From NCBI GenBank assembly GCA_001949185.1, contig BDGG01000001.1, positions 4,453,624 through 4,517,623 on the forward strand: a DNA stretch of 64,000 nucleotides, in the 5' to 3' direction. Positions within the stretch are counted from its first letter, which is position 1. Every line of letters begins with the position of its first letter. Below, in pieces: positions 38,769 through 61,060 of the stretch. The position numbers and the translations under genes were made by a program. The notes under the pieces are model-generated. The model made no database searches. It was not told the origin of the DNA and saw only the letters and a list, made by a program, of their open reading frames with translations. The stretch comes from Ramazzottius varieornatus. Lineage: Eukaryota; Animalia; Tardigrada.

Positions 38769-41174
38769 ATGTCGGACGAGACGATGGATCATGACGGCGA
38801 CACGGGAACACAAAGCCAAGGAGGAGGCTTTGAATGGGCAGTGCCCGAAGACGAGTTGGACTTCGAGGACAGCGGCAACGATGACTTCGGCGGTCGAGAC
38901 AGCCTTATCTACGCCGTCGACTTTTCCCACAAGATGTTCGAAGTCTGTAAGCCAAAGAAAGCTGGAGACAAACCCCGAACGGCTCTATACACAGCTGTAC
39001 AGGTAAGCTAACTGCTAACACTAATGGAACGAGTGAATAACGAAGGCTTGTGTCTCATAGGCGATTCGAGAAGCCGTCATCAGTCGAATCTATCGAAGCG
39101 AGCAAGACTTCCTGGCCATCATCTTCTACAACGTTTCCATAAGCCGTGGTACGAGTTTCAAGCACATCAACGTCGTGGACGACGTCCAGCGTCCAGGAGC
39201 CGAAGTGGTCAAGAAGCTGAACAACTTGCTGAACATGAGCGCGGACGAGCTGATAGCGGAGTTTGGCGTCACCAACAACTGCTCCATTGGCGATCTCTTA
39301 TGGGCCTGCAACTCGCTCTTCTCCACCATCTCCCAGAAGCTCTTCAGCAAACGTGTTCAGATCTTCACGGCGAACGATGATCCACACAAGGGAAATCGCC
39401 AGTATGTACTCTCGATTGTTTATCAGTTTATGCGAAATACTATGTCTGCAACTAGCGAATAATTATTTTGAGCACCTGCCTACATCAACCTTTATATTGG
39501 TCAACGTGATCGTGTATGCAGGTTCATGCTCAGCGATTGTTTTGTGGATGTTTGTCTTATAGGTCGATCAACTTTGCCAAGCAGAAAGCCACCGATATCT
39601 GGGAGAACGGCATCTCCATCACAGTTTTCGCCATGGATCTTCCCGATCATACCTTCGATCAGACCAAGTTTTGGGACTTAATCATGATCGCTGGTGATGA
39701 TGAAGACCAACGAGTGGCCCAGCTCGGAGACTGGGAAGACTTGACCAGCGCAGTCCGTCGTAAAGACCACGCCAAACGAGCCATGGCGCGTATTCCTATA
39801 GTCCTAGGTGACGGTCTCGAACTAAGCGTCAGTGTGTACACGCTAGTCCGCACAGCTACCAAAGCAGCTCCCGTCAAACTCCACAGTGGCTCTAATGAGA
39901 CAGTACAGGCGGAGACCACCAGCATGGAAGAACAAGGGGCGACCATCCTAATGCCTACTGACTTTAAGAAATATATGTCCTTCGCTGGTCGGAATCTGTA
40001 TTTCAGTCTGGAGGAAGTTGATGAGATGAAGAGGTTTGGGACACAAGGGCTGAAAGTCATTGCTTTCAAGAGTTTAGACTTCCTCAAAGAGAAGCATCAC
40101 ATTAGGCCAGCACAGTTCATCTACCCGGATGAGCATTCGGTTCGAGGGTCTTCGAAGCTCTTCATAGCTTTGCTGATGAAGTGTCTCGATAAGAAAGTCA
40201 TGGCGCTTTGTCAGTACATTCCACGAGAGAATATCGCCCCAAAGTACGTGGGCTTGGTTCCGCAGGAAGAAGAGCTGAGTGAAGATGGAACACAGATCGT
40301 TCCACCGGGCTTCCATATAGTCTTCTTCCCCTTCGCTGATGACTTCCGATCGAACTTGCCGAAACCGACAGACGCACCCGTTGCAGAAACAGAAGCGATC
40401 GAGAAAGCTCGGGTATGTTTTTTAAAAAAATTTGATATTTGGGATATCCGCAAATCGGTTCACTCAGACCGCTTTCCCAAGTAGCACACGCTCTCAACCG
40501 ATAACCGTCGAAACATGCGCCACTTGAGTCAGTGAAATCATCTCCATGTCTTACTTTAATTTCGCTTGGCAATGCATTCGCGAGTTTTCCTGAAACTAGA
40601 AAGTTTATTTTTGCGGTTTTAGGAATTGTTGAAGAAGCTAAAGTTTTCCTACAATCCAGAAAACTTTTCGAATCCGGTGCTGCAGACTCATCTGAAGAAC
40701 ATCGAAGCACTCGCCTTACAGCTGGAAGTGGATGACGAGGGAGGGGTAAAGGTGGAGGACTTCACGGAGCCAAAGACCAAAGCCATGGAGAAACGAGCGG
40801 GCAAGGTGATGCAAGAGCTCGTGGATCTCGTCTACCCCAATGGATATGATCCCCTTAAGGCTGCTGGACCCAAGAAGCGCACCTACGAACCCAAAGAAAA
40901 AAAAGCGCCGGTAAAGAAGAAAGGTCCGGCTAGTGGGGAGGGTGACGGAGGTGGCGATGCTGACATCGCGGAAGCAGCTGAGAACGGCACGCTGAAGAAG
41001 CTGACTATCCCAGTTCTCAAGGCCGTATGTCGTTTCAGTGCTCGCATTTCTTATCGAACGATTGACAATTTTTTCGTTTTGCAGTACTGTCAGAAGCACA
41101 AGATCAAACCGGAAGGCAGCAAGAAGGATGACTTGATCGGAGCCATCGAGACACATCTGGCCGGAAATGACTGA
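38769..41174 (+). CDS. XRCC6: Ku70
   Basis: GRDSLIYAVD vWA start, LWACN, KRVQIFTANDDPH, FIYPDE...GS.KLF.ALL, PPGFHIVFFPFADDFR, YNPENFSNPVLQ, C-terminal SAP (LKKLTIPVLKA|YC). Confidence 0.96.
39473..39524. repeat. Intronic palindrome family B (CACCTGCATAC-N30-GTATGCAGGTG)
   Basis: CACCTGCCTAC-N30-GTATGCAGGTT in a Ku70 intron. Confidence 0.75.
40478..40526. repeat. Intronic palindrome family A core
   Basis: CAAGTAGCACAC-N25-ATGCGCCACTTG in a Ku70 intron. Confidence 0.8.
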
Positions 41175-41541: not shown

Positions 41542-44500
41542 CTAACATTCTACATCCAAAGGCAGCTCTTCGAACCGATGTCCGGTGCGAACTCGGCAAG
41601 TCATTGCTGTATTTTGTGCGATCAAAGCTTGACGTTCCCTGTCCACGTACAGCTCGGCTATCTCCATGCAGGCTGCGGCATCAGCCAGGCTGTCATGCCC
41701 TTGAACACCTCTGTCCATAGTGCGCTTTAGATTCTTCGAAACCAGTTCCGCCAGACCTGAAACGTGAGCAAACTTCATTATAAAAGAAAACCCGTGCTTT
41801 GGTTTGCTGTACAGAGAGCGAGGAACTCAGTGAACAAAATGCAATCGTCTTTCGATCACCTGCATACGCGTAGATGTACCAATACCTGGGCAAAAGAGTA
41901 CGCTGGTGCTTGGAAGAGGTTTTCCAAGCACCTGCATACATCGAGCCGTACTTCAATACAAATAACGTTGTATGCGGGTGAATGAAAGGCGAGCTCGTTC
42001 CTTACCATCCTTTCAAACACCATCAACAATTGAATTCTCACCTGGGATGTAGGTCCCTTCCATGAACATGACCGTAGTGTCAACCACATGCATGTGAATC
42101 AGTCTCAGCGCCAGCAGATCGTAATGCAGGGAATGTCCAATCAGCAGCGTGTCTTTATGGATGATCGGTCCCAGAAGATCCGTGTGGACCTCTTCAAGAC
42201 TCTTCGCTCGTACATTCATTACATCAGCCTCGGTCACACCACTGTGCCGCGTAATGTAATCAAGGACTTTTCCTTCCGGGCGGACGAAACGATCATACAC
42301 CTTCGTCAACGTTCGGTCCACAACCGACACTCGCGCAACCTCGTAGCCCTTCTCCGTGAAGATCATCTCGCAATCGAGAGCTAGAACCCTCATTTTCCAC
42401 GCGCGTTCCAGTGCTTTTCCTACAGGCTCCACTCTGTGGGTGCTTCGGAAAGCGTTCATGCCGCTGTATGCTCGGCTGACGTGCCCTGGAGCTGTGGCAT
42501 CGGTACAACCGTAAGAACGCATTCGTCCTTTGCAGCACGTGTAAACGTTGCTCTGCAAACGTGTGTCGAAGAACTTGTCGCCAGCGTGGTCTTTGTAGGA
42601 ACATTCATTCCGGATGGAGTACGAGCCGTCGGGCTCCACGCCGTAGTATTCGGTGCATCGGTCGCACAGGCGCAGCTGGTGAGCGATTTGGAACTCTTTG
42701 ACTTGATGCGAGTAGGCGACGTAGTGGTGATCGCCCACCGAAGTCTTCCCGGCCAAATCTGCGAAGAAAAAATTCACGGTGGAAAGCCGAATCACTTTCC
42801 GTAGTACATATTAGACACGAGGAAAGAATTCGGACAGTGTGATCACTACTGCAGGCCGGCAAACAGAAGTACGAACGTTGCATACACCTGCATACGAATA
42901 GCCCATTTTTAATGTACGGCTGACCGTCTGCAGATTTGTGCAAGACTCCACTACGATTTCCAAAAGTGTTTCGGACGACGGCATTATAGAGACTCACTGG
43001 ACTTCTTGCGGAAAATCAGCGGGTATCCACAATACTTCAGCTGCGGATACTTCAGCACATGTTTCTCCAAGGCTCTGTACAAGTCGACGTTTCTTATCCC
43101 CTGAGACATCTTGAGGAAGTTCTTGGCCAGCGTAACTTCGTCCTGTCTTTTCTCTTTCAAGACGTCAACCCAAGACTCCGGCGGTCCCTCAGACAGCGGC
43201 TCTACCACGATCGAACCCTCCTCCTGGACGTTGCGGAAGACCAACCTCGGAATGGTACTCAGCAGCTTATCGAAGTCGTCCACGGTTCCTCGATACAGGC
43301 TGCACTGGTCACACGAGCACTTTTTCCGCAGTCTCTGACAGCGAGCAAGCGACTCCATCGCGTCACCGTAGGAGACTATGGGGTAGTATGACACGAGTCT
43401 TTGCCAGAAGGCGCTGTATTTACTGAGGTACCTCAAGTTCCCGACGATCAGCAGGGCGTCTTTAGCACGGCTCAAAGCGACGTTGACGCGCCGTTGGTCA
43501 GTTAGGAACCCAAGCTGACCATTCTTCTTGCGCATGTTACCCGAACGAACACAGGAAAGAATAATGCACTGCTTTTCTTGTGCTTGAAAGGCGTCCACGG
43601 TGTTTATGGCCAGTCTCTAAGAGAGAATTTACTATTCAGTGATGCTTCTTCCTAGAAGATGAAATGTTTTGACTTGATACCTTGGAACTCCGCGAACTAT
43701 GATAACTCGACAAGACTGTTTCTCCAAGTGGCGCACTTATTCGGCGTTACTAGCCAAAAGCGCGCGCCACTTGAAAAAACGATCTTGCCAAACTTGTTTG
43801 CCCAAGTCGCAATCTACTCAAAAATGATCATGCAAGAATGAAAACCTGAAATTTATAACACTTTGTCACTTTTAAGAAGAGATTTCGTGAGTGTACCTTC
43901 AGGACTTCTGTGGGGAGGCAGGTATGGTTTTGCAGGATCTTGCGTATCTGAGCCGCCTGTCCTTTGTAAAATGTGATCACACCAATGTCCTCAGCGCTGA
44001 TGCCATTCCGGAGCAGGTTGATAACTAGGAAGCAGACCGTAATGGCTTCTTGGACGTTCAAGCTGGAAGCTCCATCGGCGGCGACCTCGTGAAAGCTGGA
44101 GGTGTGAATGGCCAAGGTCGCCAAGTTGGTCATCTTTCCATCTATGTCCACCCTTTGGAAAAACACTGCACTTTCTGCAATACAATGATCAGCTTAGAAA
44201 ATATCCAATTGAATATTCCAGAAACAAATTTAGTTACTTTTCGCGTTGGGAGACATGCAGTGAGCCTCGAAGCCGTAAACCACTTCGGCCAACGGTTTCC
44301 ATATGGAGGGATGCATGCGGTACTGGGTTTGTAACGTGCAGGACATGATGGAAGTATCGTTCATAGACAAAAGGCGTTCGAACAAGGAAAGCTCCAGGTT
44401 AGAAGATTTTAGCAGTCGCATGAGGACAGCTACTCCAAGTTGCTTGTCATCACCCACCATCACAACCTTCCGGCAACCTTTCGTTATGGCGATTAGTGCG

Positions 44501-47494
44501 TCTGCCTCGCTCGCTTGCGTGGCTTCGTCGATAATCACCGTCCCGAACTTGACCTTCTTCAGGTTAAAACATCCGGCGCTCTGAAAAAAGAGCACATGCG
44601 GTTAGCGAATGTGAAATAGTAGCTCGGCTAGTAAATTCGATAAGATTGTTTCAGCGAGTGGTGCATGCTTTCGACCGGTAACACTAAAAATGTGCCCCCG
44701 TTGGGGAAACAATCTTATCGAGTCTGTTTGTCGAGCTCCCAAATACTGATGTTGATTGAATTCACCAACAGTTATCCTTATCTTGTTTCTGGATATTTTT
44801 CAGAAAAATGGTTCGACGAAGCAGAACTCACGTTGCAAGTGCAGCAGATGATGTGGCTCGATTTGATGATGGACATGATGGTTTCTTCGACGAGTTCGGA
44901 GCTACACTCTTCCTTGTAATTCTTGCCCAGCTGTTTCTGGACCTTGTGGTCCAACGTAAGGGCCAGTAGCTCGTCAGAAAGATCTTCTGGGGCCACTGAC
45001 TTGGAGATGATCCGGGTGACTCTGTCGTTACCGCATTCTCTCGCAAACTGCAGAGTTAAATGGTCAGTGGCCTTGTTGCTGTTCGCGCAGCATAGAATAG
45101 GATCGGATTCCTTTAGCTCTCGAAGAAGTAGCTGCTGAACCAACGTCACAAGCACCTTAGTCTTCCCGGTCCCTGCTGGACCCTAAAAGAATTATATCCT
45201 ACGTTCAAATCGTGGTTCGGTGTATTGGAGAGATCGGCAAACAAACTCGAACGGATCGGTGTCCCAAGTGGCGGGTACTTCAAGCCAAAATGACTGAAAA
45301 AGTGCGCCACTTGGAACGATCTGATCGAGTTTGTTAACCGAACTCCCGCTCATTAGATATCTCGCAAAAATATGTTCAGTTTTATAGGTTACTTTCGCAG
45401 TAGAAATCTTCTGTCATGTTTCAATTGGCTATATCGTCGTACCTTGATCAGGCACAGATTTGAGTGTAAGGCCAAGTTCACCGCTTCCGCCTGTTCTTCA
45501 TCCAGTCCGTGTAGCTCCAGTTCTTTACATTCCCTCTGTTTCATGAAGTGCCGGTCTCTCGCTTGATTCTGACCACCAAGTATCTTGCGCTTGAGTTCGC
45601 CACTGATGTAGTCGGTCTTTCCCCGGAAGCGCGCCAGTGCATTGAGACGTCGCGTATGAGCGATGTCGTCACTGCAGACCTCCACCGACACGCTACCGCA
45701 CAAGTGCTCTTGTCTGAGAGGTTTGTCTCGGAATGACACCACCACAGAGAAAACGGCTCTGGAAGCACTCCGGCCGTCGACAAACTTCTCTTTCTTCTTG
45801 CCTTTCTTGACTTTGGCCCCAAGTAACGCCCACTTCCGTTTGGATGATTCAGAGCTGAGGTTACCTTCGAGTTCTTCCATGTCGTTAACGAACGCTCGGT
45901 ACGGCACGACTGCGCCGTGTCGTTCCACATACACCGTTACCACTGCACCTAAGTGAACGACCAAAACGGTTCCATCTGGAAAGAATTTATGAGAACGAGA
46001 ACCTCGGCAAACAAGGTCTTCGCGAATTTCACGAACCTACATACGTCTTAAGAATAGGAAATATGACTACTGCTGTGTGCAGGTGCGTAAAACTTCAGCA
46101 ACTGATGGACCTGCATACTTTCCGACTGGAAACAATATGTGTAACAATGTATGCAGGTGTGTGAAAATTCTAGCAATCTCTCTTTTCCGACCTTTCGGTA
46201 CGAGTACCTTTGCGGAATTTTGTGCGGTCGATTTCGGCGTCTGTAGCGAACTTGATGCTTTCCACCATTGCGGTAGGCGGAACATTGGGGTCTACATAGA
46301 CCGTGACGTCCTCCATGAAGGGCAAGGACAAGCAGTCCACCGCTTCCGACAGCCACTGCAAACGCTCCAGCTCCACAAAGTGCTGACTGTATTCTTCTTC
46401 GTTTTTGAAGTAGGTCTTGCGCGGTGGAATGTGCTGACGGTAGTCATCCTTCAAAACAAAATGATCGGTCATCAATGAAGGACTCCACTGGAATATTCTT
46501 TATTCACTAAAACCAACGTAACATAATTACTGTATTTTTTCTAATATACGAATATACTGTATTCCCTCGATGGTTTCGCGAATCACGTGACGGTCAACGT
46601 AAATATTACCCGGCGGGGATGGAAATGCCTGTGTCTTCAATCAACGTTACTGCCAATCAAGTTCCGTGATGGGCGACAATCAGACAATCAGTGATGTCAG
46701 TGCGGGTGTAGTTTACTGGCGTGATGACGTACTTCGCGAAACCATCGAGGCAATACAGTACTGCAATTCACACCTGGAGTCCTCGGATGCCCAGCTCTTC
46801 TCCAATCCACTTCTTGGCTTCTCTGGTCACCTGATACTTGGTGATCTTCAAGGAGCTTTCTGCACAAAGGGAGACCGGTACGAAGCTGTCGCTGACACAG
46901 CAAGCTAGAATGTCATGGTGACAGTCGATGACAGGCTTCCAGTCGGCTGCGTTGTAGCTCTTCTGAGACAAAGCGCAGGTCCGACAGAAGACCACTCCAG
47001 GTACAACATTGCTGGTAGTTTTCCGGGTTTTCAGCTGCTCGTACAGGTCGAAGACATTCGGCTCGTCGCACTTGTGGCAAATGACAGAGAAAACTTTCGG
47101 TTGGTTTTTTTGACGGACGGCGATCTTGCGGTGATCCGCCATATGAAGATGGCTCAGGATATGACTGACAAACAAGTTCTCTACTGTTAGCTTCGAATGC
47201 CCAGTCATTCTTGAGGCGTGCAGAACTAATGCTGTTCCGTATTATACGTGCAAAAAAACAAGTACAAACCTCTCTTTGTGTTGGACACTTTCTTCTTCCG
47301 AGTTGCCATTGCAAAACCAGAGATTGCAGTCCTCCTGGACACATTGCACCAAACATCCAGTGTCCTTCGACTGGCAAAATCTGTAAGCAAATACGGTTTA
47401 TAATCTTGTCCTCCATGAGTGCATGACAAACGGAAACCAAATTGACGTTTTAAGCGAAGTGAACTGTAACTTACCCGCACTGCGGGGAGGACAT
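41542..47494 (-). CDS. UPF1-like (CH zinc domain + SF1B helicase) protein fused to a REXO1-like zinc finger and DEDDh exonuclease
   Basis: N-term C|GFCQ...CLVQC...WFCNG, SHILSHL, CHKCDEPNVF, FCRTC. Helicase GPAGTGKT, ANSNKATD, IIDEATQ, VGDDKQL, SLFERL, QYRMHP, RVNVALSRAK. C-term LYRAL...LKYCGYP, CDRC...EC.Y...YTCC.G...GC...HV, ALDCEM, LIGHSL.YDL, VVDT, GHDSLADA. The start codon at 47494 is tentative. Confidence 0.85.
41857..41980. repeat. Intronic palindrome family B, two tandem units
   Basis: Units 41857-41908 and 41929-41980, each with a 30-nt spacer. Confidence 0.8.
43725..43773. repeat. Intronic palindrome family A core
   Basis: CAAGTGGCGCAC-N25-GCGCGCCACTTG in a helicase gene intron. 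Confidence 0.85.
45265..45313. repeat. Intronic palindrome family A core
   Basis: CAAGTGGCGGGT-N25-GTGCGCCACTTG with long complementary outer arms, in a helicase gene intron. Confidence 0.85.
46034..46159. repeat. Intronic palindrome family B, two tandem units
   Basis: Units 46034-46085 and 46108-46159, each with a 30-nt spacer. Confidence 0.8.
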
Positions 47495-48628: not shown

Positions 48629-50638
<2,010 letters not shown>

Positions 50639-51157: not shown

Positions 51158-54100
51158 TTATGTTCTATGAAAGTCCAATTTAAGAATTCGAATGAAGGTT
51201 TTCTTAAACTGCTGGTTGGCAAGTGCATAACAAAAAGGATTGATGGGACTGTTTAAGTAGCACAGCCAATAACTCAAGGCATAAAAGTCGGCGTTAACAC
51301 ATCCATTACAGAAGCCTTCGACGGTGGCCAGGATATGCCAGGGCGTCCAGCATAGCACGAAGGCGCCCATGATGAATGTGATCGTCTTTAGAGCTTTCCT
51401 GGCGCGGTTCTCCGACTTTGATTGCTGGCGTTTATTGATGCTTTTCTTCCTGCTACTTCGACTAGCAGCCGCTCGTAATCGTCTTCCAAACGCCCGAAGT
51501 TTCTCCGAGTTGTCCCGGCTGGAGAGCATCGAGTTGGTTTGATGCAATGCGGCCTTGTCGTTATCGTTGCTGTTAGTGTTGTTCGCAGAGCGTTGGTCCG
51601 ATTCGTATCGAGTAGACTCTTCACCGATGTCACTGACTTCCGGCTTGACCGAGACGCGCAAAGGAGGACTTCGAGCTGTACGAGTCAGGTTAAGAGGGGA
51701 GTTTCGACCGGAAGTGATCGGAGTGATCACGTCCGGGATCTGAGGAGAGTCTTTGGTGGAGATTGGGGCTGTGCTTGATCGTTCGGGCGTGGCTAGCGGA
51801 GGTGCGGCTACTTTGAAGGTCAACTGAGGTCCAGGTACTTGGAGTTTGGGAGGTGTGGAGCTACGTTTACGAAGGGTTGAGGGGGATGAGCTGATGGAAG
51901 ACCGGTTGGTTGGAGTTGAGCTGTGCGTTCCGTCGATTGAGGAGTTGGGCGACTTGAGGCTTTCTTGATCGATAAAGCGCCAGTCGTTGGTGCTGTTCAG
52001 TGGGGTGCGTCCAGTGAAGGGTTGTAGTAACCCACTGGGAAGCTCGTCGAAGCGCACAGGGAAAGGCACGCGCGGAATCCAGACTGGCTCGACAAAGTCG
52101 GCGGGGCTATCAGAAGAGACCGCCGAAATGGCTCTTCCCCCTTCAGCCGACGCACTTCGTGCCGAGGCCTCGTTTGTCGCCGAAGAAGACGCGCTCTCCC
52201 GTTGAGCAAATAAGAGACGAATTTCATCGTTGAGCTCTTTGGCTAAAAGAATAGTCTGTAAAGTGGTGGCAGTGTTGATGATGGGTTGTGAAATGCAAGG
52301 AAGGGCAAGGCTGGGCCGGGAAGACGTCAGCGCGGTCTTATCCACGTCAGGTAGCGACCGAGACTGTGGAAGTGGCGGTTCGACGGAAGATGGTCCTTCA
52401 GGAGAAAGGTCGATCAAGCTCTTTTTCAGCTGAACGACGGGCTCGTCTTGGGAGCGGTGTTTGAGCTTGGGCAGTCCTGCTGGTTTTGGAGGAGGCTGAA
52501 TCTTCGGCACGATGACTTCCTTCTGGCCGCGCGGGCGCTGACGGTGCGCCATGGTCTGTCTAATGTCACGGAAAACATGGTTGTGGGGCCTGGCTGTGGT
52601 GCCTCCTTTCACTGGCGGCTTCTTGTTGATAGGCTGATTGGGATGAAAGGCCGTTTTCCCGCCGGCTGCTCCTTCAGCCTGCTCCGTGTCCGAGGGGAAT
52701 TCGGGACTGCTGGAACGGTCGTGGTCTCCAGAGCCCGAGCTACCACTGGTGTCGCCAGGAGGCTTCAGCGGGGTCTGTACGTCCACATTCGTGTCAGTCG
52801 TCGTCCTTCCTGCAAAGGGAATAGCATGGAATATAAAAAGAAAGGGATAATTGAGGAAACATTGACGTCATGATACTTCAGGATGAATTTTGCAACAGTG
52901 CCATAATCTTTAATTCGATTTGAAAAGCTGTTGAACGTACAAAGCTCTTACATCATGCAATAAAATTTCTCAAGATTCGCTCGTTCGTGCATAACTCAAC
53001 ACAAATCTGTCCTGAATAAAAAACCAGTCACCCATGTCATCAACGGGAAAAAGTTGAGCTGACAACCTTTCTTATTATCCAAGCACCTCTAAAATAAGTC
53101 AGCTGAAGTTTCATCAAACTTGAATCCAAAGTCCAAAATTCAGGTACTACCGTAGTACGCATACGTATTTACTGGAAATTGTGTATGGGCTGCTAGATCG
53201 ATTAGAATTTTGAGGAACTTCCGGTCAGTACGAACCTTGTGTAACGGTTGTTGAATTGAAGACAACGCTCACATCGTTCAACTGCGGTTTGAGCGTGTGA
53301 ACGGTTAGGAAGCCTGCCGGTTTGTTAGTGTCCACCACTTTGTTCACACCGGTCGCGCCCAGTCGGACCATCTGCTGCATCTTCTGGTGCTTCGCCGCGG
53401 ACTTCCTCTGCAGTGTGAAAGCCGTCTGATAGATGCCGGCATACAGTGACAACAATACCACCATAGTCGACCAAAAATACGCAAAAATGAAAACTAGATT
53501 AAAAGTAGGGTTTGATTTGATATACTGGGCTTCACAACTGCCTTCGCCCATTCCACGTCCCCCCATAAACGTATCCCATGCTAAATGTATGGTAAAAAAC
53601 AGGCCCGATGGAATAATCCACGTCATAATGATCATAGTTTGCACTTTTCTTTTAGACCTCCAGTTCCGGTATTTGGCGGGGATCTTCACCGAGCAAAAGC
53701 GATCAATGGTGATGAGCAAGACGTTGTACTGGCTGACCAAGCAGACAGTATAGTCCAGGGAGAGCCACAAGTCACACAAGATGTCGGGCATGGGCCAGCG
53801 TCCCAACAGCAAGTAAGTGGAATAAGCCGGCATGGAAAATAAGCCAATTAGTAAATCGGTCACCGCTAATGAGGCGATGAAATAATTGCTGGGTTGACGC
53901 AGAGCTCGTTCCACCACAAAAGCGATTAGTACCAGGATGTTTCCGAGAACGGTGATGAGGGCGGTGATGGCTGTCAGCGTGGCAATGATGGCCACTTCCC
54001 AGTTGGCATACTTGAGCGGTTCCGGAAGCTGAAGGGACTCGGGCGAGGTGGCGTTGGTCAGGTTGCCGTAAAGGAGGTCCGCGGAGAAGGGAGTGGTAAG

Positions 54101-61011: not shown

Positions 61012-61060
61012 CAAGTGGCGCACGCTGTTGGACGACAATAGTGTAAATGTGCGCCACTTG
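61012..61060. repeat. Palindrome family A core (non-coding region)
   Basis: Perfect CAAGTGGCGCAC-N25-GTGCGCCACTTG with outer arms. Confidence 0.85.

What the first reader, a model, noticed from the sequence alone, without database searches (positions are those of the whole stretch)
41542..47494. UPF1-like helicase fused to a REXO1-like DEDDh exonuclease in one gene
Seen: the minus-strand gene encodes a UPF1-type Cys/His zinc (CH) domain and all SF1B helicase motifs, then a REXO1-type zinc-finger region and an exonuclease with intact DEDDh residues (ALDCEM, HSLHYDL, GHDSLAD). The fusion does not rest on splicing guesses. One uninterrupted ORF (42984-43598) carries both helicase motif VI (RVNVALSRAK) and the REXO1-like LYRAL...LKYCGYP segment. 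A phase-1 intron (42997-42759) then joins the nuclease exon in frame. Established: canonical UPF1 is highly conserved, has no nuclease domain and recruits nucleases (SMG6, exosome, XRN1) in trans; REXO1 has no helicase. Inference: this is a diverged UPF1 paralogue carrying its own 3'-5' exonuclease, possibly a self-contained RNA surveillance or small-RNA trimming enzyme. I do not know of this architecture being described.
Basis: partly seen in the sequence, partly recalled or inferred. Interest (0 to 1): 0.88.

Follow-up and report, generated by a model that had tools for sequence, protein, structure and literature searches.

The report
Tardigrade UPF1-like helicase fused to REXO1 nuclease
A tardigrade (Ramazzottius varieornatus) gene joins a diverged copy of the RNA-surveillance helicase UPF1 to a complete REXO1-type RNA-trimming nuclease in one 1300-residue protein, a natural helicase-plus-nuclease enzyme that I did not find described and whose expression and activity are still untested.

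Summary
On the minus strand, 47494-41542, lies an 11-exon gene with all introns GT-AG and 1300 codons. It encodes a UPF1-type CH zinc domain, an SF1B helicase with intact motifs, and then the C-terminal module of REXO1/Rex3: a KIX/EloA-BP1 motif, a CHORD zinc domain and a DEDDh exonuclease with all five catalytic residues.

The fusion does not depend on splicing. One uninterrupted exon (43616-42998) carries helicase motifs V-VI and the REXO1 motif LY..L...L....L..GYP. A profile built only from REXO1 homologues scores that motif at 21.4 bits, against a maximum of 7.3 in 1000 shuffles. An orthologous exon from another organism (P0152, 70% identical) conserves both ends and diverges exactly at the predicted splice donor.

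The genome also has a separate canonical UPF1 and a separate canonical REXO1 (RvY_02296). No helicase was found in 150 plus 120 REXO1-family proteins, or upstream of the nuclease in 80 metagenome loci. A 2025 survey of Rex3/REXO1 architectures does not list this one.

The nearest precedent in kind is HELZ2 (UPF1-like helicases plus an RNB exonuclease). The likely function is an ATP-driven 3'-5' exoribonuclease for structured or protein-bound RNA.

Earlier scan notes cover only this same stretch.

The parts
41542..47494 (-). Whole coding region: 11 exons, 1300 codons plus stop (ATG 47494-47492, TAA 41544-41542)
   Evidence: Exon-by-exon check of GT/AG dinucleotides, phases and absence of stops; sequence read
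47475..47494 (-). Exon 1: start codon and first Cys of the CH domain. The first CxxC (C-G-F-C) spans the exon 1/2 junction.
   Evidence: Sequence; phase 2 donor GT
47270..47380 (-). Exon 2: N-terminal zinc knuckle of the CH domain, with the pattern C-x2-C-x6-C-x3-C ... WFCNG as in UPF1
   Evidence: Translation; the comparison with the UPF1 pattern is from my own knowledge
46774..47209 (-). Exon 3: remainder of the UPF1-type CH (Cys/His) zinc domain
   Evidence: Pfam PF09416 UPF1_Zn_bind, E 5.7e-9, profile positions 32-149 of 152. The only PDB matches are Upf1/Nam7 CH domains, and the His and CxxC ligands align.
46208..46487 (-). Exon 4: region between the CH domain and the helicase core; no family match
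45443..45975 (-). Exon 5: lies where UPF1 has its 1B/stalk region; too diverged for any family match
44832..45182 (-). Exon 6: RecA1 with Walker A GPAGTGKT (model residues 461-468) and motif Ia
   Evidence: Pfam AAA_11, E 1.1e-10; sequence
44238..44580 (-). Exon 7: motif II DEATQ (D595 E596), motif III GDDKQLG, SLFERL, QTQYRMHP
   Evidence: Pfam AAA_11 3.9e-15 and AAA_12 2.9e-7; best PDB matches Nam7/UPF1 at 1.6e-17
43897..44174 (-). Exon 8: RecA2, motif V region (IGVITFYKGQ)
   Evidence: Pfam AAA_12, 1.5e-9
42998..43616 (-). Exon 9, the junction exon: helicase motifs Va and VI (VDAFQAQEK, RRVNVALSRAK), a conserved Cys cluster (C-x6-C-x-C-x2-C), a variable spacer, then the REXO1 KIX/EloA-BP1 motif
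   Evidence: Pfam AAA_12, 1.4e-21, at residues 3-60. Orthologue P0152 is 70% identical over the whole exon.
43008..43142 (-). REXO1-type KIX/EloA-BP1 motif (LYRALEKHVLKYPQLKYCGYP) inside exon 9
   Evidence: Pfam EloA-BP1 PF15870, weak, E 0.014. A profile built from the upstream segments of 129 REXO1 homologues scores 21.4 bits here, against a maximum of 7.3 in 1000 shuffles. There are collinear weak phmmer hits in 75 of 150 homologues. The motif is almost invariant in P0152.
42759..42997 (-). Intron 9 (239 nt, GT-AG, phase 1) joining the junction exon to the nuclease exon
   Evidence: Similarity to P0152 ends exactly at this donor.
42042..42758 (-). Exon 10: CHORD zinc domain plus the DEDDh exonuclease Exo I and Exo II motifs
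42481..42666 (-). CHORD domain: two C3H zinc sites (exon-10 residues C31 C34 C52 H57, and C74 C75 C84 H92)
   Evidence: These eight columns are at least 90% conserved in a 41-sequence alignment, and all are present here. Domain definition from PMC12129344. The model gives short beta-hairpins at pLDDT about 86-91.
42061..42393 (-). DEDDh core with Exo I DCEM (D128, E130 of exon 10; model D1119, E1121) and Exo II HYDL (D213; model D1204)
   Evidence: PDB SDN1 3.9e-19 and ISG20 1.7e-10; invariant columns; Foldseek matches to SDN1, ISG20L2 and ISG20 at E about 1e-7
41542..41756 (-). Exon 11: last helix of the DEDDh domain with Exo III H-x4-D (GHDSLAD, 41680-41697; model H1250, D1255), then the stop codon
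   Evidence: blastp shows exon 11 aligning directly after the exon-10 match in 62 REXO1 homologues; sequence

Best explanation
This is a real single gene of Ramazzottius varieornatus. It encodes a 1300-residue protein in which a diverged UPF1 paralogue (CH zinc domain plus SF1B helicase core) has had UPF1's C-terminal tail replaced by the C-terminal module of a REXO1/Rex3-type nuclease (KIX/EloA-BP1 motif, CHORD zinc domain, DEDDh 3'-5' exonuclease). Shown: the domain content, intact catalytic motifs in both enzymes, continuity of the two halves within one exon, conservation of that exon in a second organism, and separate canonical UPF1 and REXO1 genes. Inferred: the protein works as a self-contained ATP-dependent 3'-5' exoribonuclease. 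The helicase binds single-stranded RNA and, using ATP, unwinds structure or strips proteins. The tethered DEDDh site then digests the freed 3' end. This is the way HELZ2 couples its UPF1-like helicases to its RNB nuclease, and the way UPF1 and the DEDDh enzyme 3'hExo cooperate in trans on the histone mRNA stem-loop. The retained KIX-type motif suggests, more weakly, recruitment through partners of the REXO1 kind (RNA polymerase II elongation factors).
For: Gene model: 11 exons, every intron GT-AG, no stops, 3903 nt. Helicase side: UPF1_Zn_bind, AAA_11 and AAA_12; the best solved relatives are Upf1/Nam7; motifs I, Ia, II, III, IV, V and VI can be read directly. Nuclease side: SDN1, ISG20 and ISG20L2; REXO1 family at about 40% identity over the CHORD and DEDDh parts; all eight CHORD ligands and D, E, D, H, D present; a confident model with a DEDDh fold. 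Fusion: the REXO1 upstream motif sits in the same open exon as helicase motif VI. Orthologue exon P0152 is 70% identical overall. It is nearly identical over the helicase end and over the KIX motif, is variable in the spacer between them, and loses all similarity exactly at the predicted donor. Orthologous nuclease fragments P0001 and P0151 are 64% and 58% identical. The gene is bounded by a convergent Ku70 gene and an upstream amine-oxidase gene, so it is not part of a longer unit. Mechanistic precedent comes from HELZ2 (PMC10516660) and from UPF1 with 3'hExo (PMC12775136).
Against: No activity has been measured. UPF1-type helicases move 5'->3' while the nuclease works 3'->5', so the coupling geometry is inferred from HELZ2 rather than shown. 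The KIX assignment rests on one motif, because the AlphaFold model of exon 9 was useless (pLDDT 32). Regions 1B and 1C of the helicase have no detectable similarity to UPF1.
Confidence: 0.62

Rival explanations
1. These are two functional units rather than one protein. The helicase mRNA ends at the TAA at 42984 by retaining intron 9, and the nuclease exons are expressed separately or only in a minor isoform.
For: An in-frame TAA follows the donor by 12 nt. No transcript data were available.
Against: The REXO1 KIX/EloA-BP1 motif lies upstream of that stop, in the helicase exon, so even a truncated product would be a chimera. A nuclease-only product would lack this motif, and it has no ATG upstream of the CHORD domain in exon 10. 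Conservation with P0152 stops exactly at the donor, as expected of a splice site in use. The phases fit across all ten introns. No nuclease-only protein of 131-416 aa close to this one is in the protein collection.
Confidence: 0.1
2. The fusion protein is real but acts on DNA or on R-loops in genome maintenance, as the helicase-nuclease enzymes WRN and Dna2 do, rather than in RNA decay.
For: UPF1-family helicases also unwind DNA, and several DEDDh enzymes such as ISG20 cut single-stranded DNA (my own knowledge). Dna2 is among the solved relatives of the helicase. The species is known for DNA-damage tolerance. The gene lies tail to tail with Ku70, though adjacency alone is very weak evidence.
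Against: The closest relatives of both halves, UPF1/Nam7 and REXO1/Rex3/SDN1, are RNA enzymes (PMC12129344). Nothing in the sequence is specific to DNA-repair proteins.
Confidence: 0.1
3. The fusion is real but only one half is catalytic. The other half serves as an RNA clamp or a recruitment module. For example, the helicase may act as an ATP-gated RNA anchor that positions the nuclease.
For: UPF1 itself acts largely as an ATP-dependent RNA clamp and RNP remodeller (my own knowledge). The helicase half evolves fast, at 28-45% identity to canonical UPF1.
Against: Every helicase motif and all five DEDDh residues are intact. The helicase end of exon 9 is nearly invariant between the two orthologues.
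Confidence: 0.13

Closest known systems
UPF1 / Nam7 (nonsense-mediated decay helicase)
   Same: An N-terminal CH zinc domain followed by an SF1B helicase core. UPF1 is the best-scoring solved relative of the helicase exons, and the only solved relative of the CH exon.
   Different: It is a paralogue, not the orthologue. The genome has a canonical UPF1 elsewhere (CH hit of 125 bits against 35 here), and identity to it is only 28-45%. The protein has no N-terminal disordered region and starts at the first CxxC. The 1B/1C regions are unrecognisable. UPF1's C-terminal SQ tail is replaced by a nuclease module. UPF1 itself has no nuclease.
REXO1 / Rex3 / GOR (KIX-CHORD-DEDDh exoribonucleases; PMC12129344)
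   Same: A C-terminal CHORD plus DEDDh domain with DCEM, DL and H-x4-D, preceded by the EloA-BP1/KIX motif. Identity to metazoan REXO1 proteins is about 40%.
   Different: REXO1's long N-terminal region is replaced by a whole helicase. It is a long-branched paralogue outside the clade of canonical tardigrade REXO1 proteins (RvY_02296, Hypsibius, Paramacrobiotus), although an AU test does not exclude a tardigrade-lineage duplication (p 0.34). Only part of the KIX region could be recognised.
HELZ2 (PMC10516660)
   Same: UPF1-like SF1B helicase domains and a 3'-5' exoribonuclease in one polypeptide, with zinc fingers. The two are shown to cooperate, using ATP, to degrade structured RNA. This is the best functional analogue.
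   Different: HELZ2's nuclease is an RNB (RNase II/R) domain, not DEDDh. It has two helicase domains and no CH, KIX or CHORD domain. It is an independent fusion, not a homologous architecture.
UPF1 with 3'hExo/ERI1 in histone mRNA decay (PMC12775136)
   Same: A UPF1 helicase working together with a DEDDh 3'-5' exonuclease on a structured 3' end.
   Different: There the two are separate proteins brought together by SLBP. Here they are covalently joined, and the nuclease belongs to the REXO1 branch, not the ERI1 branch.
Other helicase-DEDD fusions: WRN (RecQ + DEDDy) and Gram-positive DinG (DEDDh + SF2). Also coronavirus nsp13 and nsp14 (from my own knowledge).
   Same: A helicase and a DEDD-type exonuclease in one chain or polyprotein. 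DinG appears among the structural and NCBIfam matches of the nuclease. In nidoviruses, nsp13 (a zinc-domain UPF1-like helicase) is followed by nsp14 (a DEDDh ExoN).
   Different: WRN and DinG have SF2 helicases, act on DNA, and carry the nuclease at the N-terminus. The viral proteins are cleaved apart.

Membership tests
UPF1 family (CH-domain SF1B helicases) | CH (Cys/His) zinc domain N-terminal to the helicase | tested here: met
   Pfam PF09416, E 5.7e-9, 36.5 bits against a cut-off of 25. The same hit appears in the own-genome scan. Ligand pattern read.
UPF1 family (CH-domain SF1B helicases) | SF1B helicase core with motifs I, Ia, II, III, IV, V and VI intact | tested here: met
   AAA_11 and AAA_12 across exons 6-9. 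GPAGTGKT, DEATQ, GDDKQLG, QYRMHP, ITFYKGQ and RRVNVALSRAK are read directly. Nam7/UPF1 are the top PDB matches.
UPF1 family (CH-domain SF1B helicases) | Orthology to canonical UPF1, including the C-terminal SQ-rich regulatory tail | tested here: not met
   A separate canonical UPF1 lies at G000:C12:1.638-1.642 Mb. Identity to it is 28-45%. The C-terminus here is a REXO1 module.
UPF1 family (CH-domain SF1B helicases) | Binding of UPF2 by the CH domain and a role in NMD | not testable with these tools
   This needs interaction and functional assays.
REXO1 / Rex3 clade (PMC12129344) | C-terminal DEDDh domain with DCEM (Exo I), DL (Exo II) and H-x4-D (Exo III) | tested here: met
   motifs read.
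REXO1 / Rex3 clade (PMC12129344) | A single CHORD domain (two C3H zinc sites) immediately upstream of the DEDDh domain | tested here: met
   C31, C34, C52, H57, C74, C75, C84 and H92 of exon 10 fall in columns at least 90% conserved among 41 homologues. The fold was not confirmed against a solved CHORD structure.
REXO1 / Rex3 clade (PMC12129344) | Upstream KIX three-helix bundle (EloA-BP1 domain, PF15870) | tested here: inconclusive
   Only the C-terminal part is detected: Pfam E 0.014, profile positions 101-150 of 165, and 21.4 bits with a REXO1-derived profile. The structure model of exon 9 failed (pLDDT 32).
HELZ2-type helicase-exoribonuclease | RNB (RNase II/R) catalytic domain flanked by two UPF1-like helicase domains | tested here: not met
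   There is one helicase core and a DEDDh nuclease, and no RNB hit. The resemblance is functional only.

The most novel reading that the evidence does not exclude
Tardigrades possess a lineage-specific, self-contained RNA-decay machine: a UPF1-derived motor covalently coupled to a REXO1 exonuclease. It would act as a 'Rosetta-stone' fusion, pointing to a so far unrecognised functional partnership between UPF1-type helicases and REXO1/Rex3 nucleases in other animals and fungi, for example in co-transcriptional or 3'-end RNA surveillance.
Probability: 0.3. Interest if true: 0.7.

Novelty: new variant of a known kind. Interest (0 to 1): 0.55.

Why it matters
UPF1 is normally a nuclease-free motor that must recruit nucleases, and REXO1/Rex3 enzymes are poorly understood 3'-end trimmers with no known motor. 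A natural covalent fusion of the two has three uses. It predicts a functional link that can be tested in model organisms. It offers a compact enzyme for studying how a 5'-3' SF1B motor is coupled to a 3'-5' exonuclease, and would be a second, independent solution besides HELZ2. It also adds a lineage-specific RNA-metabolism factor to a tardigrade studied for stress tolerance. The find remains a domain-shuffling variant of known families. It is seen in one genome plus fragments from one other organism, and there are no expression or activity data.

Tried and rejected
- **Joined protein.** All searches were exon by exon. Because search for homologous proteins only sees proteins up to 1.75 times the query length, full-length (about 1300 aa) orthologues or annotated models could not be retrieved. 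The taxonomic range of the fusion is therefore unknown.
- **REXO1-centred search.** A search with P0002, residues 600-905, lists only the best 120 of 1057 hits. All of these are canonical REXO1 proteins.
- **Metagenome scans.** The scan with the junction exon found nothing. The scan with the nuclease found 80 loci, none orthologous and none with a helicase upstream.
- **Exon 9 structure.** The AlphaFold model built from two sequences was useless (pLDDT 32), so the KIX fold is unconfirmed.
- **ESM Atlas.** The search with exon 9 returned only generic AAA_12 clusters.
- **RNase_T.** Pfam RNase_T did not reach E 10 on the split nuclease exons. Homology was established by phmmer against the PDB and the 1.8-billion-protein library instead.
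- **Origin of the nuclease.** The careful tree places the fusion clade beside a long-branched crab GOR-like paralogue (95/90), which may be long-branch attraction. Holding the fusion clade together with canonical tardigrade REXO1 is not rejected (AU p 0.34). I make no claim about when the fusion arose.
- **Artefact readings rejected.** A misassembly at 43000-43400 is unlikely, because the junction lies in one ORF and is reproduced in an independent assembly of another organism. A pseudogene is unlikely, because there are no stops or frameshifts and the catalytic residues are conserved.
Full report
**What genome this is.** The window is G000:C1:4453624-4517623 of a 55.8 Mb, 200-contig assembly. 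Its canonical REXO1 gene encodes the protein that NCBI names RvY_02296 of Ramazzottius varieornatus (P0185). An earlier scan note about a SAHS-like gene in the same window had already pointed to a tardigrade.

**Gene model.** Reading the minus strand gives 11 exons:
- 47494-47475
- 47380-47270
- 47209-46774
- 46487-46208
- 45975-45443
- 45182-44832
- 44580-44238
- 44174-43897
- 43616-42998
- 42758-42042
- 41756-41542

A script checked each exon in its own phase without joining them. Every intron is GT-AG and 60-286 nt long. No exon has an internal stop. The lengths add up to 3903 nt, which is 1300 codons plus TAA. The residue numbers I give come from this coordinate arithmetic.

The gene is bounded on both sides. 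Downstream lies a convergent Ku70 gene (Ku and Ku_C domains, + strand, ending at 41174). Upstream lies an amine-oxidase gene on the minus strand.

**Helicase half.** Exon 3 matches Pfam UPF1_Zn_bind (E 5.7e-9, above the curated cut-off). Exons 6-9 match AAA_11 and AAA_12. The first CxxC of the CH domain spans the exon 1/2 junction, and WFCNG, SHI..HL, CxxC and C..C follow in the UPF1 order. The protein therefore starts directly with the CH domain.

The motifs GPAGTGKT, CANSN, DEATQ, GDDKQLG, SLFERL, QTQYRMHP, IGVITFYKGQ, VDAFQAQEK and RRVNVALSRAK are all intact. Among solved structures, the best relatives of exon 7 rank as follows:
- yeast Nam7 and human UPF1, at 1.6e-17 to 4e-15
- Sen1, ZNFX1, IGHMBP2 and Dna2, all weaker

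Only UPF1 CH domains match exon 3.

The genome has a separate canonical UPF1 on contig 12, with a CH hit of 125 bits against 35 bits here. The fusion helicase is only 28-45% identical to it where the two align. Exons 4 and 5, where UPF1 has its 1B and stalk regions, match nothing. This is a strongly diverged UPF1 paralogue.

**Nuclease half.** Exon 10 (238 codons) matches Arabidopsis SDN1 (3.9e-19), ISG20 and ISG20L2. In the library of 1.84 billion representatives it has 4877 hits, and the best long ones cover residues 10-233 at 36-46% identity. The named ones are REXO1 or 'exonuclease GOR' proteins of animals.

In a 41-sequence alignment, the eight Cys/His columns of the CHORD domain and the Exo I and II residues D128, E130 and D213 are conserved and present here. 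Daniels et al. define the CHORD domain for the Rex3/REXO1 clade (PMC12129344). Exon 11 aligns directly after exon 10 in 62 homologues and supplies Exo III, H-x4-D in GHDSLAD. An AlphaFold model of exon 10 (pLDDT 84) has the DEDDh fold of SDN1, ISG20 and Pan2.

**Is the fusion real?** The key exon is number 9 (43616-42998, 206 codons, no stop). Its first 60 residues are the end of AAA_12 (E 1.4e-21). Residues 154-201 give a weak hit to EloA-BP1, the Pfam domain that marks REXO1 (E 0.014).

To test this second hit independently, I took 129 REXO1 homologues and cut out the 100 residues upstream of the point where exon 10 aligns, without reference to exon 9. I built a profile from these segments. 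The profile scores exon 9 residues 159-203 at 21.4 bits, while the best of 1000 shuffles scores 7.3. Pairwise phmmer hits are weak, but they are collinear in 75 of 150 homologues. One uninterrupted reading frame therefore contains both helicase motif VI and a REXO1-specific motif.

A protein fragment from a 986-bp ENA contig of another organism (P0152) is 70% identical over the entire exon. It is almost invariant over the helicase end and over the LY.ALEKHVLKYPQLK.CGYPLIFRKKS motif, and it is variable in the spacer between them. It loses all similarity exactly at my predicted donor site. That pattern is what purifying selection on a spliced fusion exon would produce, and it argues against misassembly. 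Fragments P0001 and P0151 (64% and 58% identical) are the corresponding nuclease exon.

**Is the architecture known or common?** I looked for it in several places and did not find it.
- None of the 150 best REXO1-family representatives has any similarity to exons 3-9.
- The 120 best REXO1 relatives of 498-1584 aa carry only PF15870 and PF00929.
- Of 80 metagenome loci with a REXO1-like nuclease and up to 10 kb of flank, none has a helicase upstream.
- In the own genome the other REXO1-like gene (C1:6.39 Mb) has no helicase beside it, and the fusion is single-copy.
- The 2025 survey of Rex1/Rex3 architectures sampled R. varieornatus, using the canonical A0A1D1UMZ8. It lists unusual architectures (thioredoxin tails, tandem DEDDh domains) but no helicase fusion.
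- Full-text searches found no description of it.

These surveys are partial. The length window of the search for homologous proteins kept me from retrieving full-length orthologues or the database's own model of this gene.

**Origin.** In a careful maximum-likelihood tree of the CHORD and DEDDh region (56 rows), the fusion sequence and its orthologue form a long-stemmed pair (support 100/97). The pair lies outside the tight clade of canonical tardigrade REXO1 proteins and sits next to a long-branched crab GOR-like paralogue (95/90), a placement that may be long-branch attraction. Forcing the pair together with the tardigrade REXO1 proteins is not rejected (AU p 0.34). The time of the duplication and of the fusion is unresolved.

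**How it most likely works.** Shown: both catalytic centres are intact and conserved, and the two halves lie in one reading frame. Inferred: the protein is an ATP-driven 3'-5' exoribonuclease for RNA that is structured or protein-coated.

There are two precedents. HELZ2 has UPF1-like helicase domains and a 3'-5' RNB nuclease that cooperate, in an ATP-dependent way, to degrade duplex-containing RNA (PMC10516660). In the second case, UPF1 and the DEDDh enzyme 3'hExo act together on the histone mRNA stem-loop (PMC12775136).

The retained KIX-type motif is proposed in REXO1/Rex3 to contact the RNA polymerase II machinery (PMC12129344). It hints at nuclear, transcription-linked substrates, but this is speculation. 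Rival readings are separate expression of the two halves, a DNA or R-loop role, and one half being non-catalytic. I rate these at about 0.1 each, for the reasons given under Rival explanations.

**Verdict.** Function and expression are untested. The gene is a new domain architecture built from two well-known families, analogous to but independent of HELZ2. I class it as a new variant of a known kind, of moderate interest.

Noticed in passing
window 43725-43773 and 45265-45313 (introns 8 and 5 of this gene); also 2692-2740 and 61012-61060: A 49-nt palindromic element, CAAGTGGCG...31 nt...CGCCACTTG, always with the same spacing. There are 4 exact matches in the window against 0 expected from shuffles. 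It looks like a small hairpin-forming intronic repeat family, and is probably the family noted in earlier scan note s1-794252.
   Followed up: partly
L076:1944-5304 (+), JGI metagenome contig Ga0194135_10007616: In an unidentified eukaryote, a small ISG20/Rex4-like DEDDh exonuclease (RNase_T; Exo I to III in ORFs 1944-2429 and 2434-2706) is followed about 200 bp later, on the same strand, by a ZNFX1-domain SF1B helicase (PF25396, AAA_11, AAA_12). This is either an adjacent gene pair or a second, independent nuclease-helicase fusion in the opposite order.
   Followed up: partly
window 39516-41174 (+): A Ku70-type gene (Ku beta-barrel 2.3e-36, Ku_C 7.5e-18, SAP-like tail) is convergent with the fusion gene. 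Their stop codons are 367 bp apart.
   Followed up: partly
window 48963-50608 (-) and 51158-52786 (-): Upstream neighbours on the same strand are a flavin amine-oxidase gene (Amino_oxidase, 3.5e-14) and a rhodopsin-family GPCR with a very long Ser/Pro-rich third loop or N-terminal region in one 542-aa ORF (7tm_1, 4.2e-15).
   Followed up: no
window 43296-43340 (exon 9, residues 93-107): A Cys cluster, C-x6-C-x-C-x2-C, lies between the helicase end and the KIX motif. It is conserved in the orthologue P0152 although the surrounding spacer is variable. It may be an extra zinc knuckle specific to the fusion protein.
   Followed up: no
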